The notes below the pieces were generated by a model that was not told the DNA's origin, ran no database searches, and was given only the letters and a program-made list of their open reading frames with translations. 64,000 nt of DNA, taken from positions 34,224,001 through 34,288,000 of the forward strand of contig CATNEN010000038.1 in the NCBI GenBank assembly GCA_950097015.1. The letters run 5' to 3'. Both the position numbers and the translations under genes were made by a program. Source of the stretch: Macrostomum hystrix. Lineage: Eukaryota > Animalia > Platyhelminthes. Within the stretch, counting starts at the first letter, position 1. Each line of letters begins with the position of its first letter. Below are positions 1-42,370 of the stretch, piece after piece.

Positions 1-381
1 AGACGTTGTCATGGTTAATCAATGAACTCACCAGATCAAGCTGTGGCCATTGTGCCTTCAGATAAATGTAGCTAAGTCGTTAAAAAAGAATCACAGCAAG
101 TATTTTGCCTGTACTTGTCAACGTGAATGTATTTTTTTAATTTTAATGCGCAGATGACAATCACAGAGAAACATCTCTAAAAGCTGCTGCTTTTGAAGAA
201 TTTAAAGGCACAACTAGGGTAAAAGCTTTTAAAATGTGATGTATGATGCGTAGTTGAAAAGCTATTTGACAGACACTTTAATAGACAACGGCCAATAAAA
301 TGAAACTGCTTTAGTAACTGCTTCGACTTTCACAATAAATGTCCGCTGCATGTTTCACAAGCGAGTCTCACTAGCAACAAA

Positions 382-1221
382 ATGGGACCACTGCTAGCTC
401 AGCTAGTCCTGTTGCAGATTTTGAACAATCAAGCCACCAGCTGCAGAACCACCTTCCACCCAATTCTCACGGCGAACTGTGTGTCAAAAGTTCACCAGCA
501 GGCGCTCAATCTTGACATCGCGGCCTGCGCACTCCGCTGTCGGACAGCTCCGAGGTGCCGAGCCTTCGCCATGGAGCCGTCGACTCCGACGACGCAGCAG
601 CTCTGCCTGTTGTTCGCATTCGATGCCTGCAGCTCGCAGCTGCTGCTCGATCCCAGCTCGTGGAGCAGCGGCTGCGGCAGCAGAAGGCTCCGAGTGTTCG
701 TCAAGCAGTCGGAGGGTCTCGAGCCGGGCCGACTGTGTCCAGCCGACTATCGATGGGTGAGCGGCGTCAGTGGCAGCCAGTTCAAGGGATCGCTGTACAA
801 GGCTGCGGGGAACAGGCAGGTCGGGAGCTGGAACACCCAGGCTGTCAGCTGCCGGAGCTTCCTGAACATCTTGGAGGGCTCCGCCATGCCGCTGACGAAG
901 CTGGCCGATCTGAGCAGCGTCCAGGAGCTCCAGGATGTGAGGACGTCCATTGAACTCGCCAGTGGTGACATCTGGGTGGGCGCCACCTCACTGGGCAACG
1001 GCAGCTGGGCCTGGCCTGACTGCGGCTGGCCGCTGCCTCTCAGTACAACCGGCAATGGCGGACTGTGGAACACTGGCGAGCCCAACGAAGCAAACAGCAG
1101 CGACATTAGGGCCAGGATTTTGAGCTCGGGCCTCTCGGACCGACCCGCCAGTTTGCAGTTCTATAACGGTGCCTGCGAGTGCTCTGATCCATTTTCGTTC
1201 TTCACTACTACTGGCCTATGA
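382..1221 (+). CDS. Secreted PAN/apple-like + C-type lectin-like protein, paralog 1 (intronless)
   Basis: 279-aa ORF with a hydrophobic signal peptide. PAN-like C-x3-C-x5-C-x-AF...C-x-LF motif (CALRCRTAPRCRAF...CLLF). CTLD hallmarks CP..Y/W, A..C, L..L...EL, IWVG, W.W.D, W..GEPN, ACE. Confidence 0.85.
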   Translation: MGPLLAQLVLLQILNNQATSCRTTFHPILTANCVSKVHQQALNLDIAACALRCRTAPRCRAFAMEPSTPTTQQLCLLFAFDACSSQLLLDPSSWSSGCGSRRLRVFVKQSEGLEPGRLCPADYRWVSGVSGSQFKGSLYKAAGNRQVGSWNTQAVSCRSFLNILEGSAMPLTKLADLSSVQELQDVRTSIELASGDIWVGATSLGNGSWAWPDCGWPLPLSTTGNGGLWNTGEPNEANSSDIRARILSSGLSDRPASLQFYNGACECSDPFSFFTTTGL

Positions 1222-1320
1222 AGAGTTGTCATCAAGCTTAGGACTTAAGAAGGATGAATGTTCTTGTTTTATTCTTAATTGTGTCCTTGTTGGCTTACTG
1301 ATCTACTTAGTTTGCTTGTG

Positions 1321-1425
1321 TGAGATTCGCGGGCCAGAATTCGCGATCTTGCTTTGTTCTACAATTTCGAATCCGGGAGTGCAACGGCGCCTGCGAGTGC
1401 TCGGGCCCGTTTTGGTACTTTTGGC
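1321..1425 (+). pseudogene. Orphan 3'-terminal fragment of a PAN-CTL paralog
   Basis: Reads RARIRDLALFYNFESG, then after a 1-nt frameshift NGACECSGPFWYFW. Homologous to the last ~30 codons of the paralogs (RARI...NGACECSDPF). Confidence 0.75.
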
Positions 1426-1845
1426 AATACGTATGGTCTATTCGAAAGTCTGTGGTCAATACGTATGGTCTATTCGAAAGTCTGTGGTCAATACGTATGG
1501 TCTATTCGAAAGTCTGTGGTCAATTCGTATGGTCTATTCGAAAGTCTGTGGTCAATACATATGGTCTATTCGAACTGTGGTCAATACGTATGGTCTATTC
1601 GAACTGTGGTCAATACGTATGGTCTATTCGAACTGTGGTCAATACGTATGGTCTATTCGAACCAAAGATTATAAATACCAAATACCAAATACCAAATACC
1701 AAAGATGATAAATTATAAATTTAAATTTAATTAAAATTAATTAATTAATTAAAATTATAAATTTAAAATTATAAATTATAAATAAATAGGGTATTTATAA
1801 TCTTTGATTCGAGCTGTGGTCAATACGCATGGTCTATACGAACTA
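1422..1845. repeat. Minisatellite, 32-bp then 29-bp units (TGGTCAATACGTATGGTCTATTCGAA[AGT]CTG), interrupted by a MITE
   Basis: About 8 tandem units to 1662 plus one displaced unit at ~1807-1845. Confidence 0.9.
1663..1806. mobile_element. 144-bp MITE, P-element-superfamily-like
   Basis: TIR CAAAGATTATAAATACC...GGTATTTATAATCTTTG; 8-bp TSD ATTCGAAC/ATTCGAGC; CANRG terminus. Confidence 0.7.
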
Positions 1846-2664
1846 TAAATTATCAATGTGAACTACCAGCTATAAAATAAAAAAGCGCACTATGAATACC
1901 ATAGACATAAATATGTCAGCTAAAATGTCTTAGGGTAAAAAGAAATCCTTCGCGTCCGTCTGTCAACTTTCCTTTTAACGGCCATAGACAAAACGACGAC
2001 TTTCGAAAAGCGAAGAGCACTCAATCTGAGATCGGAGCGCTTCTTAATTGATTGCTATCCGCTGCTCTGTTTAGTGTTAAAAATCAACCAATTAGTTTGT
2101 ACTCAGTTATCCCAGACAGTCAAACGGTAACAGCCGTGCAAATTCCTGGCAGTCAGGTATGTGACACCTGCCAGAGAGTATATGGTGCTTAATTGTAAAC
2201 TGATAATGTCAGCGTTAATGAAGACCGTTGCAGATAATGTCAATAAAAGTCAAAATCTAAATCGATCAATGCTTGTCAATCAAAAATGAATCTGTTGATT
2301 GCCTTCCGTCCGTCTGCATTAGCAGCCCTGCATTAGAATAACAAAATAGAACGGAAGGGACAGCATGAAAAGTAAGCACTATACGAGCTTGACTGAACTG
2401 ACGTCCTGCTGGCACTAAAAGCCCCAGCTCTGGCGTCTATTGAGGCCTTAGCAAAATTATAACGACATGTTTGAGAGACTGGCGACGCAAGCCTTGAGCC
2501 CATAAAAGTGATACAGTGAGAGTTATATTTGTCGCCATGGAGACACATTTAGTGGCCCAGTACGGCTATAGAAAGCAAGCATTTCTAAAAAAGTCTATCT
2601 AAAAAAAATCGTCAAAGCTAGAGCCCAGAACTTTTTCCATTGGCTAAAAGCACAGAGAGTAGCC

Positions 2665-3507
2665 ATGTTTGCTCTGCTGGCTCATCTACTCCTGCTGCAC
2701 ATGCTGAGTTGTCCAGCCGCTAGCTGCGGCAACTTCCACTCGATTCTTACATCGAACTGCGTGTCACCAGCCTACCAGCGTGTGATGTCAGTCGGTCCAG
2801 ACCTCGCCTCTGGTACCGTGGCCTGCGCTGCTCGCTGTCGAACAGCTCCGAGGTGTCGAGCCTTCGCCATGGAGCCGTCGACTCCGACGACGCAGCAGCT
2901 CTGCCTGCTGTTCGCATTCGATGCCTGCAGCTCGCAGCTGCTGCTCGATCCCAGCTCGTGGAGCAGCGGCTGCGGCAGCAGAAGGCTCCGAGTGTTCGTC
3001 AAGCAGTCGGAGGGTCTCGAGCCGGGCCGACTGTGTCCAGCCGACTATCGATGGGTGAGCGGCGTCAGCGGCAGCCAGTTCAAGGGATCGCTGTACAAGG
3101 CTGCGGGGAACAGGCAGGTCGGGAACTGGAACACCCAGGCTGTCAGCTGCCGGAGCTTCCTGAAAATCTTGGAGGGCTCCGCCATGCTGCTGACGAAGCT
3201 GGCCGATCTGAGCAGCGTCCAGGAGCTCCAGGACTTGCGGTCAACCACTGGACTCGCTAATGAGGAAGTGTGGGTGAGTGCAGCTCTTCTGGTCAACGGC
3301 AGCTGGGCCTGGTCTGACTGCGGCTGGCCCCTGCCCCTCATAGACGCCAGCCGTGGTGGACTGTGGGTAGCAGGCGGTCCGAACAGTCTCGGCAGCGCAA
3401 CTGTTCACGCGAGGATCGTGGGCGCCGCTATCAATGACATTGCGGACTCGCGGGATTACCATGGAGCCTGCGAATGCATTGATCCATTTTGGTTGTTTTC
3501 GCTGTAA
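2665..3507 (+). CDS. Secreted PAN/apple-like + C-type lectin-like protein, paralog 2
   Basis: 280-aa ORF with signal peptide; same domain motifs as paralog 1; GPN in place of EPN. Confidence 0.85.
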   Translation: MFALLAHLLLLHMLSCPAASCGNFHSILTSNCVSPAYQRVMSVGPDLASGTVACAARCRTAPRCRAFAMEPSTPTTQQLCLLFAFDACSSQLLLDPSSWSSGCGSRRLRVFVKQSEGLEPGRLCPADYRWVSGVSGSQFKGSLYKAAGNRQVGNWNTQAVSCRSFLKILEGSAMLLTKLADLSSVQELQDLRSTTGLANEEVWVSAALLVNGSWAWSDCGWPLPLIDASRGGLWVAGGPNSLGSATVHARIVGAAINDIADSRDYHGACECIDPFWLFSL

Positions 3508-3924
3508 AGCTTCTTTATACACTTTAGTTCTCCGAGGCAGTACATTTTGAAATTAATAGAAATACGAGTAGTGTGATGCTCGATATCTCTTTGACACTAA
3601 CATGCTGCACCGAGACAACATCTTTATAGTCTAGGCACAGACACAGAATTAAACATTGCAAGGAATATCCTTTGTCACTGCGATAATTCGACTAATTTAT
3701 GCCGATGATTTTTTCTGCACTTATATTCAATAATTTCACTTGTTTCTTGCGAGACAAGGCAATTTATTAGTTTATGCTTAGTAAACACACTGACGACTTT
3801 TGTAATGGCAACTGCACTAAGAGAGTAAAAGCTTTTTCTATCTCAAATATCTAAACAATATTATTAAAGCAGCTTTTTTGCAGCAAAATAAAAAAATGTA
3901 ATTTTTTAATTGATAAACAAATTT

Positions 3925-4106
3925 CACCTAACCCGATTGGGCCAGATGTACAGCCGACAGCAATTGCGCGGCGCATCGAAAGGCTGCGTACGACTGTTCA
4001 GTCCGTGGACTGTGGGACGACACACTCAGCCTCAATTTCGCCAGCATCACTTCAGATGCTAGTAACGATTAAACTGCTGAATTGACTAAATCAAATTTAG
4101 AGTTCA
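3925..4106 (-). mobile_element. SINE family A, partial copy (no tRNA head)
   Basis: Matches the body of the full copies at 7931-8228 and 21990-22290. Confidence 0.7.
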
Positions 4107-4189
4107 GTTTGTTACTAAATCTACCATGGCTCCACCATGCTGCTGACTTCGAGTTCGCGCCGATCTAACCATAGGCTGAAACCCCTCTA

Positions 4190-4821
4190 GGCCATACTCC
4201 GGAGGGTGACTGGTACGCCGGAGATTTCCGGCGTACCAAATGAGTTTTCCAAAAAATTGGCGTACCACCGATTCGAAAAAGCATTTGGCGTAACACCTTT
4301 GGCGTACCACCAAGCTGAAGTTGAATTGGCGTACCACTTTTAGCGTACCATTGGCACCACCAGGCAAAAATTGTTGCCAGAGTAAAAACTTTTTGTAATT
4401 TTGCGTAAATTACGACATAAAAGATACGACTACATCACACGACAATGTATTTTACGTAAAAAATTGCATATATTTTTTCCTGCATTGTATAACTTGATTA
4501 ATCATTTTATAAATATATTAATAAAATATTGTAGCCTAGTATTATTGGTAAATAAATTTCTGAGCGCTGATTATATCTGTTATTTTTTAATAATTGTTAA
4601 AGTTTGTCCGCTATATTTTTACCGTTTTCAAAGTCGAAATGTTATTATTATTATTATATTATTATTATTATTATTATTATTATTCTGTTATTATTTTTAG
4701 TGCCGCAACGTTATACACTGAGGGACCCCCACGTCTTTCTTTTGGCGTACCACTGGTGTACCACTTGGGAATCCTCCTTTTTCCTTCCGGCGTACCACAT
4801 TACACCATCCGGACTATGGCC
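4190..4821. mobile_element. MITE with ~35-bp imperfect TIRs and GGCGTACCAC subterminal repeats
   Basis: Left end GGCCATACTCCGGAGGGTG..TGGTACGCCGG; right end CCGGCGTACCAC..CACCATCCGGACTATGGCC; flanked by duplicated (C)TCTA(G); about 9 GGCGTACCA-like motifs; AT-rich centre. Confidence 0.75.
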
Positions 4822-4953
4822 TCTAGGTAATAAACGGATTTTATGTTCTTTTAAAAGAAACTGAAATTAACTACAAGGAGCTTATTGCAATACGCGGAAT
4901 CCAGGGACCAATGAAGAGAAACCTCTATAGGCCAATGTATTCATCTAAAAAAT

Positions 4954-4961
4954 GTATAAAA
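4954..4961 (+). promoter_or_regulatory. Putative TATA box of paralog 3
   Basis: TATAAAAA ~60 bp upstream of the ATG at 5016, with CCAAT motifs at ~4908 and ~4932. Confidence 0.4.
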
Positions 4962-5015
4962 AGGAAAAGTGTGACATTCATAAGCAAAAAACACGGCATC
5001 TGAAAGGGGAACAAC

Positions 5016-5891
5016 ATGCAGTTGAGCCGCAAGATTCAAAAGTTTCTTCTCATTCTGGGGTTTGCTATGTCGCTGCTGAATAGCCAGCCAAACACTGCTG
5101 ACTGCGGACGGAGGGTCCCCTTCCACCCGATTTGGACCTCGAACTGCGTGTCCCCTCAGCACCTTCAGCTGCTCAGTCTTGACATCGCTGCATGCGCACT
5201 CCGCTGTCGGACAGCTCCGAGGTGCCGAGCCTTCGCCATGGAGCCGTCGACTCCGACGACGCAGCAGCTCTGCCTGCTGTTCGCATTCGATGCCTGCAGC
5301 TCGCAGCTGCTGCTCGATCCCAGCTCGTGGAGCAGCGGCTGCGGCAGCAGAAGGCTCCGAGTGTTCGTCAAGCAGTCGGAGGGTCTCGAGCCGGGCCGAC
5401 TGTGTCCAGCCGACTATCGATGGGTGAGCGGCGTCAGCGGCAGCCAGTTCAAGGGATCGCTGTACAAGGCTGCGGGGAACAGGCAGGTCGGGAACTGGAA
5501 CGCCCAGGCTGTCAGCTGCCGGAGCTTTCTGAGCATCTCGGACGGCTCCGCCATGCCGCTGACGAAGCTGGCCGATCTGAGCAGCGTCCAGGAGCTCCAG
5601 GATGTGAGGACGTCGACTGGACTTTCAGCTGAGCAGATCTGGGTGGGCGCCGCCTCACTGAGCAACGGCAGCTGGGCCTGGTCTGACTGCGGCTGGCCGC
5701 TGCCTCTGCTTAAGACGAACACTGGAGGACTTTGGAAGCCGGGCGAGCCAAGCAATCCGAACAGGGTGGGAAACCGTGCCAGGCTATTCAGTGCCGATAT
5801 GGCAGACTCGGACAGCAGCGAGCAGTTCCACGCAGCCTGCGAATGCGCTGATCCATTCTTCTCTGTTTCTGCCGTTGACTTTCTGCCGTAA
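5016..5891 (+). CDS. Secreted PAN/apple-like + C-type lectin-like protein, paralog 3
   Basis: 291-aa ORF with signal peptide; same motifs; EPS in the ligand loop. Confidence 0.85.
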   Translation: MQLSRKIQKFLLILGFAMSLLNSQPNTADCGRRVPFHPIWTSNCVSPQHLQLLSLDIAACALRCRTAPRCRAFAMEPSTPTTQQLCLLFAFDACSSQLLLDPSSWSSGCGSRRLRVFVKQSEGLEPGRLCPADYRWVSGVSGSQFKGSLYKAAGNRQVGNWNAQAVSCRSFLSISDGSAMPLTKLADLSSVQELQDVRTSTGLSAEQIWVGAASLSNGSWAWSDCGWPLPLLKTNTGGLWKPGEPSNPNRVGNRARLFSADMADSDSSEQFHAACECADPFFSVSAVDFLP

Positions 5892-5971
5892 ATGAGCAGC
5901 GGTGTCAGAGCAGCTTCTACTCGAGTGATTCTATCGGCTGTCTGAGCAGAGGGACACAGATTTGATGCTTT

Positions 5972-6918
5972 TGTTGTGAGCTGCGTCTCACAACGCCCTT
6001 GCCCCGACCCCTGCGTTCTCTAAACTTTCCACCCCCAGTCACCTGCTCAATCCAGTTCTACCCGGCCCCGTCTTAGCCCACCCTCCTTTTCGTTGTTTTT
6101 CACTCGCCCATTGGCTGCCCCCTGCGCCGTCTTCGCTTTGGGGGCTAGCCCAATCAGGTCTCTCGCCAAGGAGACTTCTGATTGGCTAGCCTTCCACCTT
6201 TGCTCTCTCTCTCTCGGCTCTCGACCCTGTGAGTTTTGCCCCCACTCCCAGCCCTGCGTGGCTTAGCCTCCCCCGGCCCTGCGTGGCTCCGCTCTGCCCC
6301 GTCCAGCCATATGCTCTCGCCCCCCACCCTACGCTGTTATTTATTCGCGCGCGCTGCCCGTGGCCAGCTCGCCCGCGCCGCTCCGCCCGAGTACTGCCTT
6401 GAGAACGCTGTCTTGAGTTAGAGCAATAACTTAAATAGGAGGTTAGGCGCGAACGATTGTTATAGAATAAATTACGCAGCCTGAGACACTTCGATTGATT
6501 TGAGTGCAGCGTTCGATCCCTCCCGTTAAGAAAAGCTTTAACGAGTTATTTACTCGTATTTGTCCGTGCTCCAAACTTGTTCATCTGCCCGAAATCTGCT
6601 ACTTCCCAAGCTCATCATCATCACCTTTCTCCTCCAGAGTCTTCTCTCGAGTCTGCGAAGCGTCGGTACGCCTCCAGACCGTCATCCAGCTCTCTCTGGG
6701 GCTGTCGAGTGGCTACCTGCTCGCAGTGAAATCACTCGCGCATCTTCTGTGTCGGGCTTAGCGAGTGTCTATACGCTCCAAGCCCATTCCGTTTCCGCTC
6801 GGAGTGTCTGAACGCCTCGAGGGTCGCCGCGTCCCATCCCTCATCCCCGGCAAGCTTTGGGCAGTCTGTACCCGAACCCTGGCTACCACGCCTGCGAGCG
6901 GTAGCGGCAATTACAACA
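5972..6918 (+). mobile_element. Solo LTR (Ty3/Gypsy-like)
   Basis: TGTTGT...ACAACA termini; perfect 4-bp TSD CTTT (5968-5971 and 6919-6922); internal CCAAT boxes and AATAAA at ~6466; no coding remnant. Orientation tentative. Confidence 0.8.
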
Positions 6919-7930
6919 CTTTCTATTTGTTTCAATCAGAATTCCTGTTCAGAGTTCAGGCTTGCAGCGAGATGCATGCACGTCAGACAACTGACGTCAG
7001 AGACAAGTTCTAATTCGGAAACATATTCTACTGAAAATTAGGAATCAAATATAATTTTGCCTTCATCTTTCTTTGCTCTGGTTAACGCCTGAAGGCACGA
7101 AACTAGGTCGATAGCAACTTCAAAAAGAATTGACCATGGGCCACTGAATATTTAACTTTTAAACAGTAGACCACGGGCCTTTTTGAAATACCGACATGTA
7201 TCGCCCAAAACATTCCACCAATCGCGATAAAAATCCAGCTCACGGGCTAAATTTCCGCTCCATCCGATGAAGCAACTTCCAGAATCACAGAACATCAGCA
7301 TCGTCGAAATATTCAACTATATTCGTCGGAGTCTCTGGTGGCAAGAACCACCAATATAGGCATCATGTTGCTGCTCGAAAAATCTCATCATTTAATTATG
7401 TCCGCTATCATTGTTGACTATTTTGGATAGATCGAATTATTTTTTTTTCATTTCTGAACCAATATGGATTCGCCATAGAGTTTATATATAGTAGAGCAAT
7501 GTTACTTGTCATAGGGCGGAAAATGTAGCTTCATTTTTGGACTTTCACGAAAATCGGTCATTCTGTTTGGGAGCTATCGTGAAGTAGGCAGCGGGTATTT
7601 GAAATGCCACTGTGGTCTTTCCCCAAGGGAGAAAGTCTTAGAAAATCTCCTTTGTGAATTATTTTCATTTTAACCGAATAATTTTCCTTTTTCACGTCTT
7701 CCTTTTCATATTCTTTGAATCGGAAGTATATCGAATCGCCCAAAGCTTTGACATGCAAGTGTCTGTGGGATATTGCGATTGACAGCTGGCTCCAAAAAGT
7801 TTTCCTTTTTGTAGTTTAATAGACAAATGAAGTTAGTAAAGATGAAAAAACCGAAAATAGAAGTTTGTAATCAAGCGAATTTGCAATGCTTTTTGTCTAC
7901 TATTAGTAGCACATTTTTTCTGGTCGCCTA

Positions 7931-8228
7931 ATAATTAAATATAATAACTGATTACACCTGCCCCAATTAGGCCAGTTTAGCACAGCAGCAGCTATTGCGC
8001 GGCGCATCTGAAAGCTGCGTACGGCTTTTCAGTCCATGGACTGGAGGGACGCCACACCCACCTTCAATTACCACAGCCAATGCTGGTACCAATTTAACAG
8101 CTGAGTGAACTAAAGCAATATAGAGTTAAGTGTCTTGCTAAAAGGCACAATTTTTTCCAGCCGAGTTGGGAATCGAACCCCGACCACCAAGTCGTGAGTC
8201 CGACGCTCTAACCACTAGGCTACAGCCT
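7931..8228 (-). mobile_element. SINE family A, full length (tRNA head + CORE-like domain)
   Basis: The reverse strand has A box TAGCCTAGTGG and B box GGTTCGATTCCC, then a CORE/MIR-like GTGCCTTTTAGCAAGACACTTAAC...CAGCTGTTAAATTGGTACC segment and an AT-rich tail. Confidence 0.85.
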
Positions 8229-8348
8229 TCGGCAGCTTAGTTTTGTGAGAATACCCGTTTAATTTAGCGAATCGAGTAAAACGATATTTTTCATTTTTTC
8301 ATAAACCATCGTAACGATAAAAAAGTTATCGCACTTTAGATATTTTGT

Positions 8349-8598
8349 GCCAGATGTACAATTGAGCCAGATGTACAATTGAGCCAGATGTACAATTGAG
8401 CCAGATGTACAATTGAGCCAGATGTACAATTGAGCCAGATGTACAATTGAGCCAGATGTACAATTGAGCCAGATGTACAATTGAGCCAGATGTACAATTG
8501 AGCCAGATGTACAATTGAGCCAGATGTACAATTGAGCCAGATGTACAATTGAGCCAGATGTACAGTTGAGCCAGATGTACAATTTAGCCAGATGTACA
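8349..8598. repeat. Minisatellite, 17-bp unit GCCAGATGTACAATTGA, ~15 copies
   Basis: Direct tandem repeats. Confidence 0.95.
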
Positions 8599-8937
8599 AG
8601 TGGCTTAAGACGCTTGCACGTTACAAAATAGTATATCTTTCTACTGGCCTCACCAATCGTGTTCATTAAAAAGTATAACCTGTCCTGATCCCATACATTC
8701 AATCAAATCATCAGTTCATGCAACTCGGGATATGCAACTCTAGCGCTGCAGCCAATGAGGTGAGCTTGATCCCAATACGACTCTACAGATCAAAATCTGC
8801 TTTTGACAACTGTGAAAGTGAGCAAGTTTAAAGCTGTATCTGAAATAGACTGCCATTTTATATCCTTACTTTCTTACTATCTGCACAGTCAGCGATCTTT
8901 ACAAGTGTGTTGTTACGGTCCGAGGTAATTTAGTAAG

Positions 8938-9411
8938 ACGTGGAGCAGCGGCTGCGGCAGCAGAAGGCTCCGAGTGTTCGTCAAGCAGTCGGAGGGTCTC
9001 GAGCCGGGCCGACTGAGTCCAGCCGACTGGGTGAGCGGCGTCAGCGGCAGCCAGTTCAAGGGATCGCTGTACAAGGCTGTGGGGAACAGGCAGGTCGGGA
9101 GCTGGAACACCCAGGCTGTCAGCTGCCGGAGCTTCCTGAACATCTTGGAGGGCTCCGCCATGCCGCTGACGAAGCTGGCCGATCTGAGCAGCGTCCAGGA
9201 GCTCCAGGACTTGCGGTCAACCACCGCTAATGAGGCCTGGTCTGACTGCGGCTGGCCCCTCCAAGCTACAGCCATGGAACGCCTATGGAATGGTGGCGGA
9301 AGCGGCTCCAACGTACGTGGCCGGATAGTCAGCCTGGGCCTATCGGAGAGAAGCGGCTCCATGAGTTTCCATGGCGCTTGCGAGTGCAGCGATCCGTTCT
9401 GGCTTTTTTAA
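8938..9411 (+). pseudogene. 5'-truncated, internally deleted PAN-CTL paralog 4
   Basis: Near-identical to the paralog core from WSSGCG onward; lacks the signal peptide and PAN N-terminus; deletion removes the WVG motif; reading frame stays open to the stop at 9411. Confidence 0.8.
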
Positions 9412-9521
9412 CAATACGCTGGCGAGAGAGCTCTAGCTGTTTGGAATCTCTGCTATCCCAAATAGGCCCCTGGCTAAACTCTGATTCGTAGAATTGTAGA
9501 TGTGGCTTTCTTCCTCAAGAG

Positions 9522-10688
<1,167 letters not shown>

Positions 10689-11078: not shown

Positions 11079-12362
11079 TTAGTCTATGGTCGTGGGCACC
11101 ATTGTCGAGCTGCAGAATGAGAAAGTCCCACCAGGTTCGTCTGAGCTGCCGCATTCTGAGAAGGCTCGCAATCGTCGAAGCTCGAGGTGTGTGTCACCCT
11201 GGTGCTGGTGGTGGTGGTGCTGCTGCTGCTGCTTAAACTGCCTGTTAGCCTTGCGCTTGCACAACGGGTGCAGATACCGCCGAAAGTTGCTGCTGAACCG
11301 GTGGTTGCTGTGCAGACACACAGACAGGTCGACCGCGAAGAATGCCTGGCTGATTGTGTTGCTGACAACCACCAGCATGGAGAACACGGCCGGCTGCAGC
11401 AGCTTCCAGTACCAGGTGTCCACAAGGGTCCAGATCACCATGGGAATCTGGAATAGCAGGAAACTGTTGGCCGACAGCAGGACAGCGCGAGTTGCCTCGC
11501 GACCGTGGCCAAGAATGTGACTTTTCTGGCTGTGCTGAGCCTGATGGTGATGATTTTGATGATGAAAGCGCTGCGGCAGACGATCACGAAGTCGGTGCTG
11601 ACGCTCCGGATGGCGCAGTTGCCAAATGATGCCCAGACTGCAGATCAGGCAGATTAGCGCAGGCAGTAGGGAGGAGTTTACGGCGACAAAGACGGGCGGT
11701 ATCGCCGGCGGAACAATGCTGTCACTGGCCTTTCCGTCCGCATCGATGCTGTGCAGTCGGTGATAGCCGCTGCCAGCCACCTGGAAGCCCTGGCCTGGGC
11801 AGCTGGCATATAGCACGGAAACGAAAGCCTGGAACAGCAGGATAGGCGGAATGCTGGTGGCAAGGCTGTACAGCCACAACAGGCCGATGAAGCTGCGAAC
11901 TCTGGACTGCGGCATTGCTGACAGGGGCCTGCGGATGCGCAACAGTTTCAGACCAGTCAGGAGCACCGTCTGCCAGCTGTGAGCCGTGAAAGCCACGCTA
12001 CGCAAGGTCCAGGCGATGGGGTGGGCGTAGGCGATGTAACTGAACGGCCCAGGACCACCCGACAGCGGGGCGGAGTTCTCAACACAATGACTGACAGTGT
12101 CCAACAGGTTGAACAGCAAGAATGCCGTGTCACTGATGCAGAAGCTGACGAAATGGTCATTGACCTCGGCGCTGAGCGGATAGCGCAGCAGAGTGGCAAA
12201 GCATGCCGCGTTGAGGGCGGCGCCAATAGGCAGGAAGACAGCCTGCAGCGCTGTCAGGCTGTAAATGGTCAGCCGGACATTTTCCGATGGGCTGTAGGCG
12301 GCCTTACGGAATTCCGGCGTACAGTTGGCCTGCCGCAAGGTGAAGAACATTGTGCCCTCCAT
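11079..12362 (-). CDS. Intronless divergent rhodopsin-class (class A) GPCR, orphan peptide/chemoreceptor-like
   Basis: About 427 aa from the ATG at 12362; seven hydrophobic segments; G..LN in TM1, ISD in TM2, W in TM4, P in TM5, F..FQIP in TM6, F...F helix 8; DRY and NPxxY are degenerate. Confidence 0.8.
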   Translation of the reverse strand: MEGTMFFTLRQANCTPEFRKAAYSPSENVRLTIYSLTALQAVFLPIGAALNAACFATLLRYPLSAEVNDHFVSFCISDTAFLLFNLLDTVSHCVENSAPLSGGPGPFSYIAYAHPIAWTLRSVAFTAHSWQTVLLTGLKLLRIRRPLSAMPQSRVRSFIGLLWLYSLATSIPPILLFQAFVSVLYASCPGQGFQVAGSGYHRLHSIDADGKASDSIVPPAIPPVFVAVNSSLLPALICLICSLGIIWQLRHPERQHRLRDRLPQRFHHQNHHHQAQHSQKSHILGHGREATRAVLLSANSFLLFQIPMVIWTLVDTWYWKLLQPAVFSMLVVVSNTISQAFFAVDLSVCLHSNHRFSSNFRRYLHPLCKRKANRQFKQQQQHHHHQHQGDTHLELRRLRAFSECGSSDEPGGTFSFCSSTMVPTTID

Positions 12363-12405
12363 TGTTGGAATACAGGCGCTGCCCAACGCACTCCAATCTG
12401 TTGCT

Positions 12406-40400: not shown

Positions 40401-41717
40401 TAGGAAGAAAATATATTAGGTGTGAATAAAATTTTCGCATTTCTTCAACAGGACATACTTGCTGGCAGGTGATTGGCAGTACTTTAAGATCCCAGAAAAG
40501 GAAATGAAAGTGAGTTTTTTTGCTTGAAGTATGCACCTGTCCTTTGAGTAGCAGATTATCGTTAAGAGACTAGGAAAACCACTAGAAATTTATTTCTAAA
40601 CTTTTGATTTACTGCTGATACTGATTGTACTGTACTGTATATTGTAAGAGCGAGATAATTTGCAGATAGACAGGTGCAAATTCATTATCTATTCTACCAG
40701 CCTGCCTGTTGATGTTACCAGCCTACATGTTGATGTTAAACTAATTTAACTATATGATCTCTAAACTTATTCAAAACCACCCGCTCTTCATTTTCCTCTT
40801 TTTACGAATCATTCTTCCCATTGTGCTCATTCTTCTCACTGTGCTCACTCTTCCCATTGTGCTCATTCTTCTCACTGTGCTCACTCTTCCCATTTGTGCT
40901 CATTCTTTTCATTGTGTTCATTCTTCCCACTGAGCTCATTCTTCCTATTTTTGCTCATTCTTCCCATTGACTTCATTCTTCCCACTGAGCTCATTCTTCC
41001 TATTTTTGCTCATTCTTCGCTTTGTTTTCATTCATCCCATTGTGCTCATTCTTCTCACTGTGCTCATTCTTCTCACTGTGCTCATTCTTCCCATTTGTGC
41101 TCATTCTTCCCATTGTGTTCATTCTTCAAATTGTGCTCATTCTTGCCTTTGTGCTCGTTCTTTCCATTGTGTTCATTCTTCCCACTGAGCTCATTCTTCC
41201 CATTGTGCTCATTCTTCCCATAGTTTTCATTCTTCCCATTGTGCTCATTCTTCCCATAGTTTTCATTCTTCCCATAGTTTTCATTCTTCCCATTGTGTTC
41301 ATTCTTCCCATTGTGCTCATGCTTCTCTCCCCTATCGCAGTCTCACCTGTCGATGGACATCGCCAGCAGGGTGAATACTGACACGCCCAGCGTTAAGAAG
41401 CGACAAAAATACAGCGCCTTGCAGAAGAATAATGGCAACTCGACGCCGAAGGTGCTAATCAGATTGCACGGAATAAACAGCAGCAGGTAGATACAGTCGG
41501 CAATGGCCAGGTTAGTGATGAACACATTTGGCATTGTGCGCAGGCTACGTCGGGTGGCAACCACGCAGATGAGGGCAGCGTTGCCTACGAGACCAAATAC
41601 GAAAATGCAGATTTGCAGGGACACGTACACAGCGTCAAGGAGTCCGATTCGGGGCTTGTAGCCGATGCAACTGCAGTTGGCATCTGACGTCGAGAATTCA
41701 GCGCTGTTATTCCACAT
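34430..41717 (-). CDS. Neuropeptide GPCR of the bombesin/endothelin/CCHamide (excitatory peptide) receptor group, 4+ exons
   Basis: Exons 41717-41347, 38183-38096, 35596 (or 35562)-35066 and 34672-34430. Motifs GN, RTMPNVFITNLAIAD, GVSVFTLLAMSIDR, RKKLAK, FFVAWGP and NPVTL (NPxxL is typical of this group). The TM4 junction is uncertain. Confidence 0.85.
34729..34940 (-). repeat. Degenerate 17-bp TCTCCCGTGTCTCATC satellite (remnant of the hAT MITE family at 36241 and 41839)
   Basis: Reverse complement of the internal repeat of those MITEs. Confidence 0.7.
35655..36120 (-). mobile_element. Composite: SINE A (35941-36120 head/core, 35655-35685 tail) with a SINE B piece (35725-35935) replacing its middle
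   Basis: Segments match the respective SINE families. Confidence 0.7.
36241..37091 (+). mobile_element. Non-autonomous hAT MITE with an expanded internal 17-bp satellite
   Basis: TIR CAGGGGTAGGCAAACT / AGTTTGCCGACCCCTG; perfect 8-bp TSD CTATAGAG; internal (ACACGGGAGAGATTAG-type)n array of ~39 units. Confidence 0.92.
37490..37880. repeat. Minisatellite, 15-bp unit CTCACTTCACTCTCC
   Basis: About 26 tandem units. Confidence 0.95.
38303..38700. repeat. Minisatellite, 16-bp unit TGACCCACTGACTCAA
   Basis: About 24 tandem units. Confidence 0.95.
39150..40183. repeat. Polypyrimidine minisatellite, 26-bp unit TTCTCTCCTTCCCTCTTTCTTTTTCT
   Basis: About 1 kb almost purely C/T. Confidence 0.95.
40810..41320. 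repeat. Minisatellite, 18-bp unit CATTCTTCCCATTGTGCT
   Basis: About 28 variant units next to the donor at 41346. Confidence 0.92.
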
Positions 41718-41838
41718 GCTGTCGTTGGCGTATTCTACAGGGAATGTCGGATACAGACAAGTAATGGCTCTGTAGGAACTCGTTAAAGATATAGTAGATA
41801 ATGGGAGACCAATACGAGCAACCAATGACTGTCTATGG

Positions 41839-42370
41839 CAGGGGTCGGCAAACTTATTAGCTAGCGGGCCAAAAAGAGAACCTAAAAGACGGCAGCGGGC
41901 CGCATTGACTGTAGAAATATAAGAGAAATATATCAGAGATAGGGAAGAGACGATATGACGGGGAGATGAGAAAGGGGAGAGATGAGACAGAGGAGAGATG
42001 AGACAGAGGAGAGACGAGAGGCGGTAGAGATAACACACGGGAGAGGTGAGACAAAGGAGAGATAAGGCACGGGAGAGACTAGACACGGGGGAGATGAGAA
42101 AGGGGAGAGACGAGACACGGGGGAGATACAGGGGAGAGATAACACACGGGAGAGATGAGGCACAGGAGAGGTGAGACACGGGGGAGATGAGAAAGGGGAG
42201 AGACGAGACACGGGGGAGATAAGACAGGGGAAAGGTGACACACGGGAGAGATGGGATAGGGGAAAGATGAAACAGTATATACTATAGTTGTCGGAAGGCC
42301 GGGCAACGGACCGGATTTAAGAGCTTTGAGGGCCGCATCTGGCCCGCGGGCCGGAGTTTGCCGACCTCTG
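41839..42370 (+). mobile_element. Non-autonomous hAT MITE, second copy with a degenerate internal satellite
   Basis: TIR CAGGGGTCGGCAAACT / AGTTTGCCGACCTCTG; perfect 8-bp TSD GTCTATGG. Confidence 0.92.

What the first reader, a model, noticed from the sequence alone, without database searches (positions are those of the whole stretch)
382..9411. Lectin cluster with a constant core and variable tips: candidate gene-conversion diversification system
Seen: in the three intact PAN-CTL genes and the truncated fourth copy, a ~420-bp central block (e.g. 525-947, ~2825-3235, ~5195-5615) is almost identical even at synonymous sites. The signal peptide/N-terminus and the last ~90 codons are heavily diverged. 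The divergent 3' part holds the CTLD ligand loop: EPN, GPN, EPS and a deleted loop in the four copies, with LSD, IND, MAD and LSE at the WND position. Diagnostic SNPs are patchwork. Copy 4 matches copy 1 at SWNT/LNIL/MPL but copy 2 at DLRSTT.ANE. Copy 3 matches copy 1 at LDIAACAL and DVRTS but copy 2 at GNWN. Known: this loop sets sugar specificity in C-type lectins. Inference: repeated conversion or recombination through the shared core homogenises the scaffold and shuffles variable recognition ends, giving a possible immune, self-recognition or mucus receptor repertoire.
Basis: partly seen in the sequence, partly recalled or inferred. Interest (0 to 1): 0.82.

Follow-up and report, generated by a model that had tools for sequence, protein, structure and literature searches.

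The report
Flatworm lectin genes with homogenised core
Three intact genes and one broken copy of a secreted lectin-like protein in a Macrostomum-type flatworm share an almost identical middle part that is copied between genes while both ends stay very different and get recombined. This is a clear, genome-wide case of a known evolutionary process in an undescribed gene family of unknown function.

Summary
c1 (382-1221), c2 (2665-3507) and c3 (5016-5891) are intact intronless ORFs. c4 (~8937-9411) is a 5'-truncated relic. A ~420-bp core has synonymous divergence (dS) of 0.03-0.05. The ends have dS of 0.6-1.1, and the flanking DNA is unalignable.

Seven intact paralogs on this chromosome share the core. 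Trees built from the 5', core and 3' segments conflict significantly, and a PHI recombination test gives p<1/5000.

The pattern holds across the family:
- The genome has at least 136 PAN + C-type-lectin-like genes.
- In 50 others I sampled, third-codon-position diversity falls from 0.69 to 0.13-0.30 in the homologous core.
- The 5' edge of the core is sharp and common to most genes.
- A 186-bp core is at least 96% identical in at least 40 copies on three chromosomes.
- Genes pair the same 5' end with different 3' ends, and the reverse.

Best reading: germline gene conversion and recombination between loci, limited to the core. There is no evidence for a programmed system, an immune role or a switch in sugar specificity. 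dN/dS in the ends is 0.4-0.65, and the Ca2+/sugar motifs look degenerate.

The scan had already found this pattern in another cluster of this family (s1-258398). It is a new member of a known kind, of moderate interest.

The parts
382..1221 (+). c1: intact intronless gene, 279 aa (signal peptide, PAN/apple-like domain, Cys-rich linker, divergent C-type-lectin-like domain)
   Evidence: ORF. PAN_1 scores 20.0 bits against a cutoff of 21.4. PDB phmmer hits DC-SIGNR and langerin CRDs at E~1e-3 with EPN aligned.
382..524 (+). c1 variable 5' module (signal peptide plus N-terminal half of PAN); unique among the paralogs
   Evidence: 5' dS against the other paralogs is 0.76-3.0. Nucleotide identity is 38-75% in 60-nt windows.
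525..947 (+). c1 homogenised core (C-terminal half of PAN, linker, and the lectin-like domain through its second helix)
   Evidence: 95-99% identical to 6 other intact copies on the same chromosome. dS is 0.03-0.11. GC3 is 0.83, against 0.64 in the 5' module and 0.70 in the 3' module.
948..1221 (+). c1 variable 3' module (WIGL-like strand, long-loop region with EPN at 1078-1086 and LSD at the WND position, C-terminal CxC)
   Evidence: dS is 0.6-0.8 against c2 and c3 but 0.10-0.12 against d1, d2 and d3 at 34.85-34.86 Mb. Homology with d1 continues ~200 bp past the stop codon.
2665..3507 (+). c2: intact gene, 280 aa; most divergent 3' module (GPN / IND)
2833..3234 (+). c2 homogenised core
   Evidence: 98% identical to the c1 core. 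Coordinates of RCRTAPRC...VQELQD.
5016..5891 (+). c3: intact gene, 291 aa (EPS / MAD); the 3' part of its 5' module is shared with d3 and d4, 620 kb away
   Evidence: c3-d3 identity is 82-100% from alignment column 120 of the 5' module onward. The 5' tree joins c3 with d3 at 97/97 support.
5193..5614 (+). c3 homogenised core
   Evidence: 98% identical to the c1 core.
8937..9411 (+). c4: 5'-truncated, internally deleted relic (no ATG, no signal peptide, no PAN; 2-codon deletion; Cys to Ser; WIGL region and loop deleted)
   Evidence: The frame opens directly after TAG TAA at 8931-8936. Core part 8939-9209 is 97% identical to c1. The junction region DLRSTT is of the c2 type.

Best explanation
These are members of a large family (at least 136 loci) of intronless genes specific to a flatworm lineage. 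They encode small secreted proteins with a PAN/apple domain, a Cys-rich linker and a divergent C-type-lectin-like domain.

The paralogs are old: their ends and flanks are saturated or unalignable. A central segment is repeatedly copied from one paralog to another by non-allelic (ectopic) gene conversion in the germ line. This happens between neighbours, between clusters 0.6-1.5 Mb apart and, in the larger subfamily, between chromosomes.

The ends are too diverged to pair, so exchange tracts stop at the edge of homology. That keeps a sharp, shared boundary, and the core remains the only substrate for further exchange. Tracts or crossovers that start in the core and run out through one end, where two genes still share that end, create new 5'/3' combinations.

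Shown: stepwise dS, incongruent segment trees, mosaics, lack of flank homology, raised GC3 in the core, the family-wide trough and the common boundary. Inferred: that the mechanism is conversion limited by homology, that the ends are kept distinct by selection, and that the products are secreted binding proteins. Their ligand and role are unknown.
For: - dS among all 21 pairs of the 7 intact chromosome-38 (contig C38) paralogs is 0.03-0.12 in the core. It is 0.56 to >3 in the 5' module and 0.3-1.1 in the 3' module, except where pairs share that module.
- Fisher tests of core against ends give p = 2e-12 to 3e-17.
- Segment trees conflict. AU tests reject c1+d1+d2+d3 on 5' data (p=2e-5), and reject d1+d2+e1 (p=5e-5) and c3+d3 (p=0.008) on 3' data.
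- PHI is 0.284 against a permuted mean of 0.469 +/- 0.012, p<1/5000. Nine of 21 pairs have runs of shared polymorphic sites with permutation p<0.005.
- c1/c2/c3 share no flank homology. c1 and d1 are homologous only from the core's 5' edge to +200 bp.
- Copies on other chromosomes are not homogenised: the C39 copy is 63-90% identical in the core (76% over the whole core match) and the C30 copy 87%.
- Family-wide, third-position diversity runs 0.69, then 0.13-0.30, then 0.6-0.72. The core is the most similar segment in 1577 of 1596 pairs, and 348 pairs have a core at least 93% identical with a 5' identity of ~0.46.
- 5' breakpoints fall within ~10 codons in 250 of 283 pairs.
- 290 of 310 pairs with a hard core at least 96% identical have no flank homology.
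- A 186-bp hard core is at least 96% identical in all 40 scored copies, out of 142 candidates, on C3, C38 and C39.
- GC3 is 0.78-0.83 in the core against 0.60-0.70 in the ends, as GC-biased conversion would give.
- The fold is confirmed. The AF2 model of family member L029 has pLDDT 95.5 and matches C-type lectin CRDs at TM 0.73-0.84. The family profile hits only C-type lectins and one PAN domain in the PDB.
Against: - There are no reads, population data or sister-species DNA. Conversion is therefore inferred from a single assembly.
- Pairs are not phylogenetically independent, so the counts of pairs overstate the number of events.
- The clades tested by AU were chosen after seeing the trees.
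- The core is also strongly conserved at protein level between species: M. lignano proteins carry very similar core peptides. Part of the low diversity is therefore plain purifying selection.
- The C30 and C39 copies used as 'unconverted' controls are pseudogenes.
- Raised GC3 could also reflect codon usage.
- Only 57 of at least 136 members could be analysed.
Confidence: 0.8

Rival explanations
1. A recent burst of duplication followed by locally accelerated change of the ends. This could be focal hypermutation or strong diversifying selection, as proposed for cone-snail toxin genes. On this view the core shows the true young age of the copies.
For: Both dS and dN are raised in the loop region among the same gene pairs: dS 0.5-0.6 against 0.15-0.2 in neighbouring strands. 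The d1/e1 segmental duplicate is 95-100% identical over 2.7 kb but carries a 66-82% patch in the lectin loops.
Against: Flanks of genes with near-identical cores are unalignable in 290 of 310 pairs, and for c1/c2/c3. Point mutation cannot give identical 3' ends on four different 5' ends, nor the rejected segment trees. dN/dS is below 1 everywhere. The 5' modules are at saturation (third-position diversity 0.69) yet keep the PAN cysteine pattern.
Confidence: 0.08
2. A programmed diversification system. The constant core would serve as the homology anchor for regulated, possibly somatic or germline-targeted, recombination that makes new receptor or lectin combinations within individuals. Truncated copies such as c4 would act as donor cassettes.
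For: The modular, patchwork structure, the common sharp boundary, the relic copies carrying mixed markers (c4) and the very large copy number.
Against: There is no expression site with silent cassettes: most copies are complete ORFs with their own ATG and signal peptide. There is no conserved motif outside the core at the junction. Every observation is explained by ordinary germline exchange. No data on individuals or tissues exist.
Confidence: 0.05
3. Constraint on the nucleotide sequence of the core itself, without any copying between genes. The cause could be a structured RNA, a small-RNA target or an overlapping reading frame.
For: Long open frames exist in other frames and on the opposite strand of the core. 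The core is GC-rich.
Against: Different subfamilies have different core sequences: more than 30% nucleotide difference in 532 pairs. No single sequence is therefore required. There is no Rfam match. The predicted folding energy is not unusual, z = -1.09. Constraint would not produce incongruent trees or mosaics.
Confidence: 0.04
4. Assembly or polishing artefact. On this view paralogous cores were collapsed to a consensus.
For: None found.
Against: The cores are not identical: each pair differs at 8-20 sites (3-11 synonymous plus 2-10 non-synonymous), and copies carry private differences. Boundaries lie at codon-level positions common to more than 50 intact ORFs on several chromosomes. Tract ends differ between pairs. 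Independent M. lignano protein records show the same conserved core peptide.
Confidence: 0.03

Closest known systems
Concerted evolution by region-limited interlocus gene conversion, with 'islands of divergence' kept distinct (reviewed in PMC3924837; examples PMC3728101 for GOT1 paralogs in Tigriopus and PMC7042247 for the CEACAM family; abstracts only were read)
   Same: Tracts of near-identity inside old duplicates. dS changes stepwise along the gene. Segments give different trees. Conversion creates new combinations. Divergent regions persist beside homogenised ones.
   Different: Here it involves tens to more than a hundred dispersed intronless genes on several chromosomes. The boundary is common and sharp to within a few codons, and it cuts through the PAN domain. 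Both ends, not one region, escape homogenisation.
Sea-urchin Sp185/333 (SpTransformer) immune gene family (PMC1988830, PMC5103432, PMC5491942; abstracts read)
   Same: Small, clustered genes for secreted proteins. Diversity is a mosaic of shared sequence blocks attributed to recombination, conversion and duplication.
   Different: Sp185/333 genes have two exons, repeats and element patterns, and no lectin or PAN fold. An immune role is shown for them and not here.
Diversifying gene conversion from pseudogene cassettes (chicken/rabbit Ig and antigenic variation systems; review PMC3924843, abstract read)
   Same: A conserved segment gives the homology, variable segments are exchanged, and truncated copies exist.
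   Different: Those systems have one expressed locus, silent donors, dedicated initiation (for example AID) and somatic or clonal change. None of this is seen or testable here, and most copies here are complete genes.
C-type lectin CRDs of the DC-SIGN / SIGN-R1 / CD23 / CEL-I / codakine type
   Same: Same fold for a family member: Foldseek TM 0.73-0.84 normalised to the target, rmsd 2.1-2.9 A. A WIGL-like strand, W-x-W and an EPN motif occur in many members.
   Different: The proteins fall below the Pfam Lectin_C threshold. The WND motif is replaced (L-x-D). In c2 and c3 EPN itself is lost. There is an N-terminal PAN domain and a C-terminal C-E-C-x-x-P-F tail.
Macrostomum lignano 'Apple domain-containing' and 'C-type lectin domain-containing' proteins (UniRef100_A0A1I8H3Z5, A0A1I8HTM9, A0A1I8GTV8; PAA63283.1)
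   Same: Closest public relatives of the family profile, E 1e-155 to 1e-43, with the same PAN + CTLD layout over the full length and very similar core peptides.
   Different: They are only ~31% identical to c1. The chromosome-38 subfamily has no close counterpart among the listed representatives. No DNA was available to test for concerted evolution.

Membership tests
C-type lectin-like domain (CTLD) superfamily | CTLD fold (two helices, two sheets, long-loop region) | tested here: met
   Met for family member L029 (33% identical to c1): AF2 pLDDT 95.5 and Foldseek hits to SIGN-R1, DC-SIGNR, CEL-I and CD23 at prob 1.00, TM 0.73-0.84. c1's own model was too poor to use (pLDDT 59).
C-type lectin-like domain (CTLD) superfamily | Sequence match to the curated family model (Pfam Lectin_C) | tested here: not met
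   No Lectin_C hit for c1-c3 even at E<=10, nor for any of 57 members at E<=0.01. Only the family profile reaches PDB C-type lectins, E 9e-6 and weaker.
Ca2+-dependent sugar-binding C-type lectins | Complete Ca2+ site 2: EPN or QPD, a downstream Glu, and WND | tested here: not met
   c1 has EPN but LSD for WND. c2 has GPN/IND, c3 has EPS/MAD, and in c4 the loop is deleted. The large subfamily has EPN...E[N/D]...L-x-D. Canonical sugar binding is doubtful for the window's genes.
PAN/apple domain | Match to PAN models and the conserved cysteine pattern | tested here: inconclusive
   PAN_1 scores 20.0 bits against a cutoff of 21.4, and PAN_4 is below cutoff. The profile hits PAN domain 1hky at E 3e-4. 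A M. lignano homolog is named 'Apple domain-containing protein' by UniProt.
Concerted evolution by interlocus gene conversion | A tract with much lower synonymous divergence than the rest of the gene and its flanks | tested here: met
Concerted evolution by interlocus gene conversion | Segments of one alignment support different trees; recombination tests are significant | tested here: met
Concerted evolution by interlocus gene conversion | Paralogs within a species more alike in the tract than orthologs between species | not testable with these tools
Programmed diversification systems (Ig gene conversion, antigenic-variation cassettes, VLR assembly) | One expressed locus plus incomplete silent donor cassettes | tested here: not met
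   At least 57 complete ORFs with their own start codon and hydrophobic N-terminus. Relics such as c4 are the minority in the loci read.
Programmed diversification systems (Ig gene conversion, antigenic-variation cassettes, VLR assembly) | Sequence change within an individual or clone | not testable with these tools
   Needs reads or cDNA from single animals and tissues.

The most novel reading that the evidence does not exclude
The constant core is not just a by-product of gene conversion. It would be the anchor of a regulated recombination process that reshuffles N-modules and lectin loop modules of a family of more than 130 genes, using relic copies as extra donors. Individual worms, or their germ lines, would then generate new combinations at a high rate. 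That would make it an invertebrate receptor-diversification system of the FREP / Sp185-333 / Ig-conversion type in a flatworm.
Probability: 0.05. Interest if true: 0.9.

Novelty: new member of a known kind. Interest (0 to 1): 0.45.

Why it matters
This is a very clean natural example of how gene conversion limited by homology can split a gene into a 'constant' centre and two 'variable' ends, and then shuffle those ends. It operates on a genome-wide scale: a 186-bp coding segment is at least 96% identical in at least 40 genes whose neighbouring codons are saturated.

It also marks an undescribed, greatly expanded family of secreted PAN + lectin-like proteins in Macrostomum-type flatworms. That family is a candidate repertoire of binding proteins for immunity, mucus or reproduction, and the animal is a tractable laboratory model.

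It does not reveal a new mechanism.

Tried and rejected
- Word search with c1 found nothing, not even the protein itself.
- Pfam Lectin_C gave no hit.
- The AF2 model of c1 was unusable (pLDDT 59). I folded family member L029 with a richer alignment instead.
- Windows with dN/dS above 1 in the variable ends: none found.
- Known RNA families in 1-10000: none. RNA folding of the core is not unusual (z = -1.09).
- Literature searches for this family in Macrostomum found only adhesion, seminal-fluid and gut papers that mention C-type lectins in passing.
- Fetching the rest of the family failed.
I therefore have no sample or expression information for the Logan/ENA homologs and no M. lignano DNA.
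- The 'stops inside' column cannot be used to count pseudogenes. Several such loci hold intact ORFs.

Full report
**What is there**

The first 9.4 kb of the window hold four tandem copies of one gene type, all on the + strand.
- c1 382-1221, c2 2665-3507 and c3 5016-5891 are uninterrupted ORFs of 279-291 aa with hydrophobic N-termini.
- c4 is open only from ~8937, directly after two stop codons. It has no ATG, no signal peptide and no PAN part, and it carries a 2-codon deletion, a Cys-to-Ser change and two larger deletions.
- Self-BLAST and a flank-inclusive alignment show that homology is confined to the ORFs. Intergenic DNA is not alignable.

**Check of the observation**

The core (c1 525-947) matches c3 5193-5614 and c2 2833-3233 at 98% and c4 8939-9209 at 97%.

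| Pair | dS core | dS 5' end | dS 3' end | Fisher p, core vs ends |
|---|---|---|---|---|
| c1/c2 | 0.054 | 0.76 | 0.77 | 2e-12 |
| c1/c3 | 0.032 | 0.94 | 0.61 | 4e-13 |
| c2/c3 | 0.043 | 1.06 | 1.09 | 3e-17 |

dS values are Nei-Gojobori estimates; the Fisher tests are.

**What the proteins are**

- Pfam gives only sub-threshold PAN hits (PAN_1 20.0 bits, cutoff 21.4) and no Lectin_C hit.
- c1 alone reaches DC-SIGNR and langerin CRDs at E~1e-3 with EPN aligned.
- A profile of 57 family members hits only C-type lectins in the PDB (mosGCTL-1 at 9e-6, CEL-I, Reg4, mincle, codakine, selectins, snaclecs), plus one PAN domain (1hky).
- The AF2 model of c1 was poor (pLDDT 59).
- The model of family member L029, built with a richer alignment, has pLDDT 95.5. 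Its C-terminal half matches SIGN-R1, DC-SIGNR, CEL-I and CD23 CRDs at TM 0.73-0.84.
- The exhaustive profile search found 1623 relatives. The best full-length ones are Macrostomum lignano proteins named 'Apple domain-containing' or 'C-type lectin domain-containing'.

This supports the lead from earlier notes that the genome is a Macrostomum-type flatworm. The canonical Ca2+/sugar site is incomplete in c1 (EPN but LSD) and lost in c2 (GPN/IND) and c3 (EPS/MAD).

**The subfamily on this chromosome**

The c1 core has 11 matches in the 220-Mb genome:
- the four copies in the window;
- four at 34.845-34.864 Mb (d1-d3 intact, d4 broken);
- one at 32.72 Mb (e1, intact, 95%);
- two broken copies on other contigs (C30 at 87%, C39 at 76%).

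Among the seven intact genes, core dS is 0.03-0.12 in all 21 pairs. The ends behave as modules:
- c1, d1, d2 and d3 share one 3' module (dS 0.04-0.12) on four different 5' modules.
- d1 and e1 share a 5' module (dS 0.08) but differ in the 3' module (dS 0.38).
- c3 shares part of its 5' module with d3 and d4.

The formal tests agree.
- Segment trees conflict. AU tests reject the 3' clade on 5' data (p=2e-5) and the 5' clades on 3' data (p=5e-5 and 0.008). The clades were named after the trees were seen.
- The PHI statistic is 0.284 against 0.469 +/- 0.012 in 5000 permutations.
- A GENECONV-like run test gives p<0.005 in 9 of 21 pairs.

The extent of homology varies from pair to pair.
- c1 and d1 are homologous only from the 5' edge of the core to ~200 bp past the stop. 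Everything else is at random level.
- d1 and e1 are a 2.7-kb segmental duplicate at 95-100% identity with a 66-82% patch in the lectin loops.
- The C39 pseudogene is only 63-90% identical to c1 across the core. The core is therefore not intrinsically invariant at the DNA level.

**The pattern is family-wide**

A six-frame search with c1 finds at least 136 loci of the same ~250-300-aa intronless architecture at 26-40% identity, on many contigs.

- Among the 50 that are not of the chromosome-38 subfamily, third-codon-position diversity is 0.69 in the 5' module, 0.13-0.30 in the homologous core and 0.6-0.72 in the loop region.
- The core is the most similar segment in 1577 of 1596 pairs. In 348 pairs the core is at least 93% identical while the 5' module is at ~46% and the 3' module at ~57% nucleotide identity.
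- Both kinds of mosaic occur: the same 5' with different 3', and the same 3' with unrelated 5'. L034 is one example, combining an L032-type 5' end with an L023-type 3' end.
- Change-point analysis puts the 5' switch within about ten codons, just before R-C-Q/R-A-F of the PAN domain, in 250 of 283 pairs. The codon alignment shows the switch within 1-3 codons in most genes, with no conserved motif upstream.
- 3' switches cluster at G-V-K-Y-K (the start of the lectin domain) and at two later positions.
- The 186-bp hard core of the large subfamily is at least 96% identical in all 40 scored matches, out of 142 candidates, on C3, C38 and C39.
- Of 310 pairs with such cores, 290 have no flank homology within 700 bp on either side.
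- GC3 is 0.78-0.83 in the core, 0.60-0.64 in the 5' module and 0.65-0.70 in the 3' module.

On the L029 model the 5' boundary lies after the PAN helix. The constant part comprises the last PAN strands plus the Cys-rich linker. In the chromosome-38 subfamily it also includes the lectin domain through its second helix.

**Mechanism**

The simplest account is old paralogs whose central segment is repeatedly overwritten by non-allelic gene conversion.
- Tracts end where homology ends. This explains a sharp boundary that all members inherit.
- The core stays the only good substrate for further exchange.
- Exchanges that run out through an end still shared by two genes, or crossovers within the core, give new 5'/3' pairings.

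The raised GC3 fits GC-biased conversion but could also be codon usage.

Selection probably keeps the ends distinct. However, dN/dS in the ends is 0.4-0.65 overall and 0.4-0.5 in the loops, where dS is also raised. The diversity therefore looks like old, retained and exchanged segments, not recent positive selection.

M. lignano proteins carry very similar core peptides, and distinct core sub-types have counterparts there. Purifying selection on the protein adds to the conservation, and homogenisation acts within subfamilies, not across the whole family.

**Rivals**

- A recent burst plus focal hypermutation fails on the missing flank homology, the mosaics and the tree conflicts.
- Constraint on the nucleotide sequence fails because subfamilies have different cores. 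There is also no Rfam hit and no unusual RNA folding.
- Assembly collapse is unlikely. The cores differ at 8-20 sites per pair, tract ends differ between pairs, and the boundary is in frame in more than 50 intact ORFs. It cannot be excluded without reads.
- A programmed diversification system is not excluded but has no support. Most copies are complete genes, and nothing beyond germline patterns can be seen.

**Comparison and novelty**

This is concerted evolution by region-limited gene conversion with islands of divergence, a well-known process (PMC3924837, PMC3728101, PMC7042247; abstracts only). Its mosaic block structure recalls Sp185/333 (PMC1988830).

Three things are unusual: the scale, the sharp common boundary inside a domain, and the fact that both ends escape homogenisation. 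I found no paper on this family.

The scan had already noted the same kind of pattern in another cluster of this family in this genome (s1-258398, judged ordinary region-limited conversion). My results agree and extend it to the whole family.

**Limits**

- There is one assembly and no reads, no population data and no sister-species DNA.
- Gene pairs are not independent.
- The contig is not human. The genes are intronless, so no spliced model was needed.

Noticed in passing
window 1425-1661 and 8345-8599: Two clean minisatellites lie in the spacers of the lectin cluster: a 32-bp unit x 7.7 at 96% match, and a 17-bp unit x 15 at 98% match. Further minisatellite-like repeats that read as long repetitive ORFs lie at about 18.7-19.3, 22.8-23.5, 32.9-33.8, 37.5-38.0, 39.1-40.2 and 42.9-43.9 kb. 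GC skew is extreme around 24-26 kb (0.83).
   Followed up: no
window 9926-10147 (-): A short ORF just downstream of the truncated c4 looks like a fragment of a BED/hAT-type zinc-finger transposase (C-x2-C ... H-x4-H context). It could be related to the truncation of c4. It was not scanned against any library.
   Followed up: no
window 11079-12386 (-): An intronless 435-aa ORF gives weak hits to rhodopsin-type 7TM and to the Srw chemoreceptor family (7tm_1 E 3.5e-5, Srw 22.0 bits against a cutoff of 22.2). It has a His/Gln-rich loop and tail. A second 7TM-like ORF fragment lies at 41343-42179 (-).
   Followed up: partly
L016 (G000:C38:32.72 Mb) vs L014 (G000:C38:34.864 Mb): The two loci form a 2.7-kb segmental duplicate, 1.5 Mb apart, at 95-100% identity. 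It carries a sharply bounded 66-82% patch exactly over the lectin loop region. This is the clearest single 'cassette replacement' in the subfamily.
   Followed up: partly
L060 (G000:C3:8.383-8.393 Mb), ORFs at +5015 and -8258: The two neighbouring genes have 97-99% identical core, middle and 3' modules, but their 5' modules are only 45% identical. Short block chimeras also occur, for example LLAGT+GNWSM against LLAGTDYWWP and LYSGTGNWSM. This suggests very short exchange tracts.
   Followed up: partly
protein P0004 (Logan assembly, 1080-nt contig) vs L030 (G000:C34:4.73 Mb): A public short-contig protein is 78% identical overall to L030. It is nearly identical through the core and most of the lectin domain but has a different N-module and tail. 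It could be an allele, a paralog or a sister-species copy.
   Followed up: partly
protein P0001 (M. lignano UniRef100_A0A1I8H3Z5, 3072 aa): The best public hit has four full-length matches to the family profile within one 3072-aa model. It is probably several tandem intronless genes merged by gene prediction.
   Followed up: no
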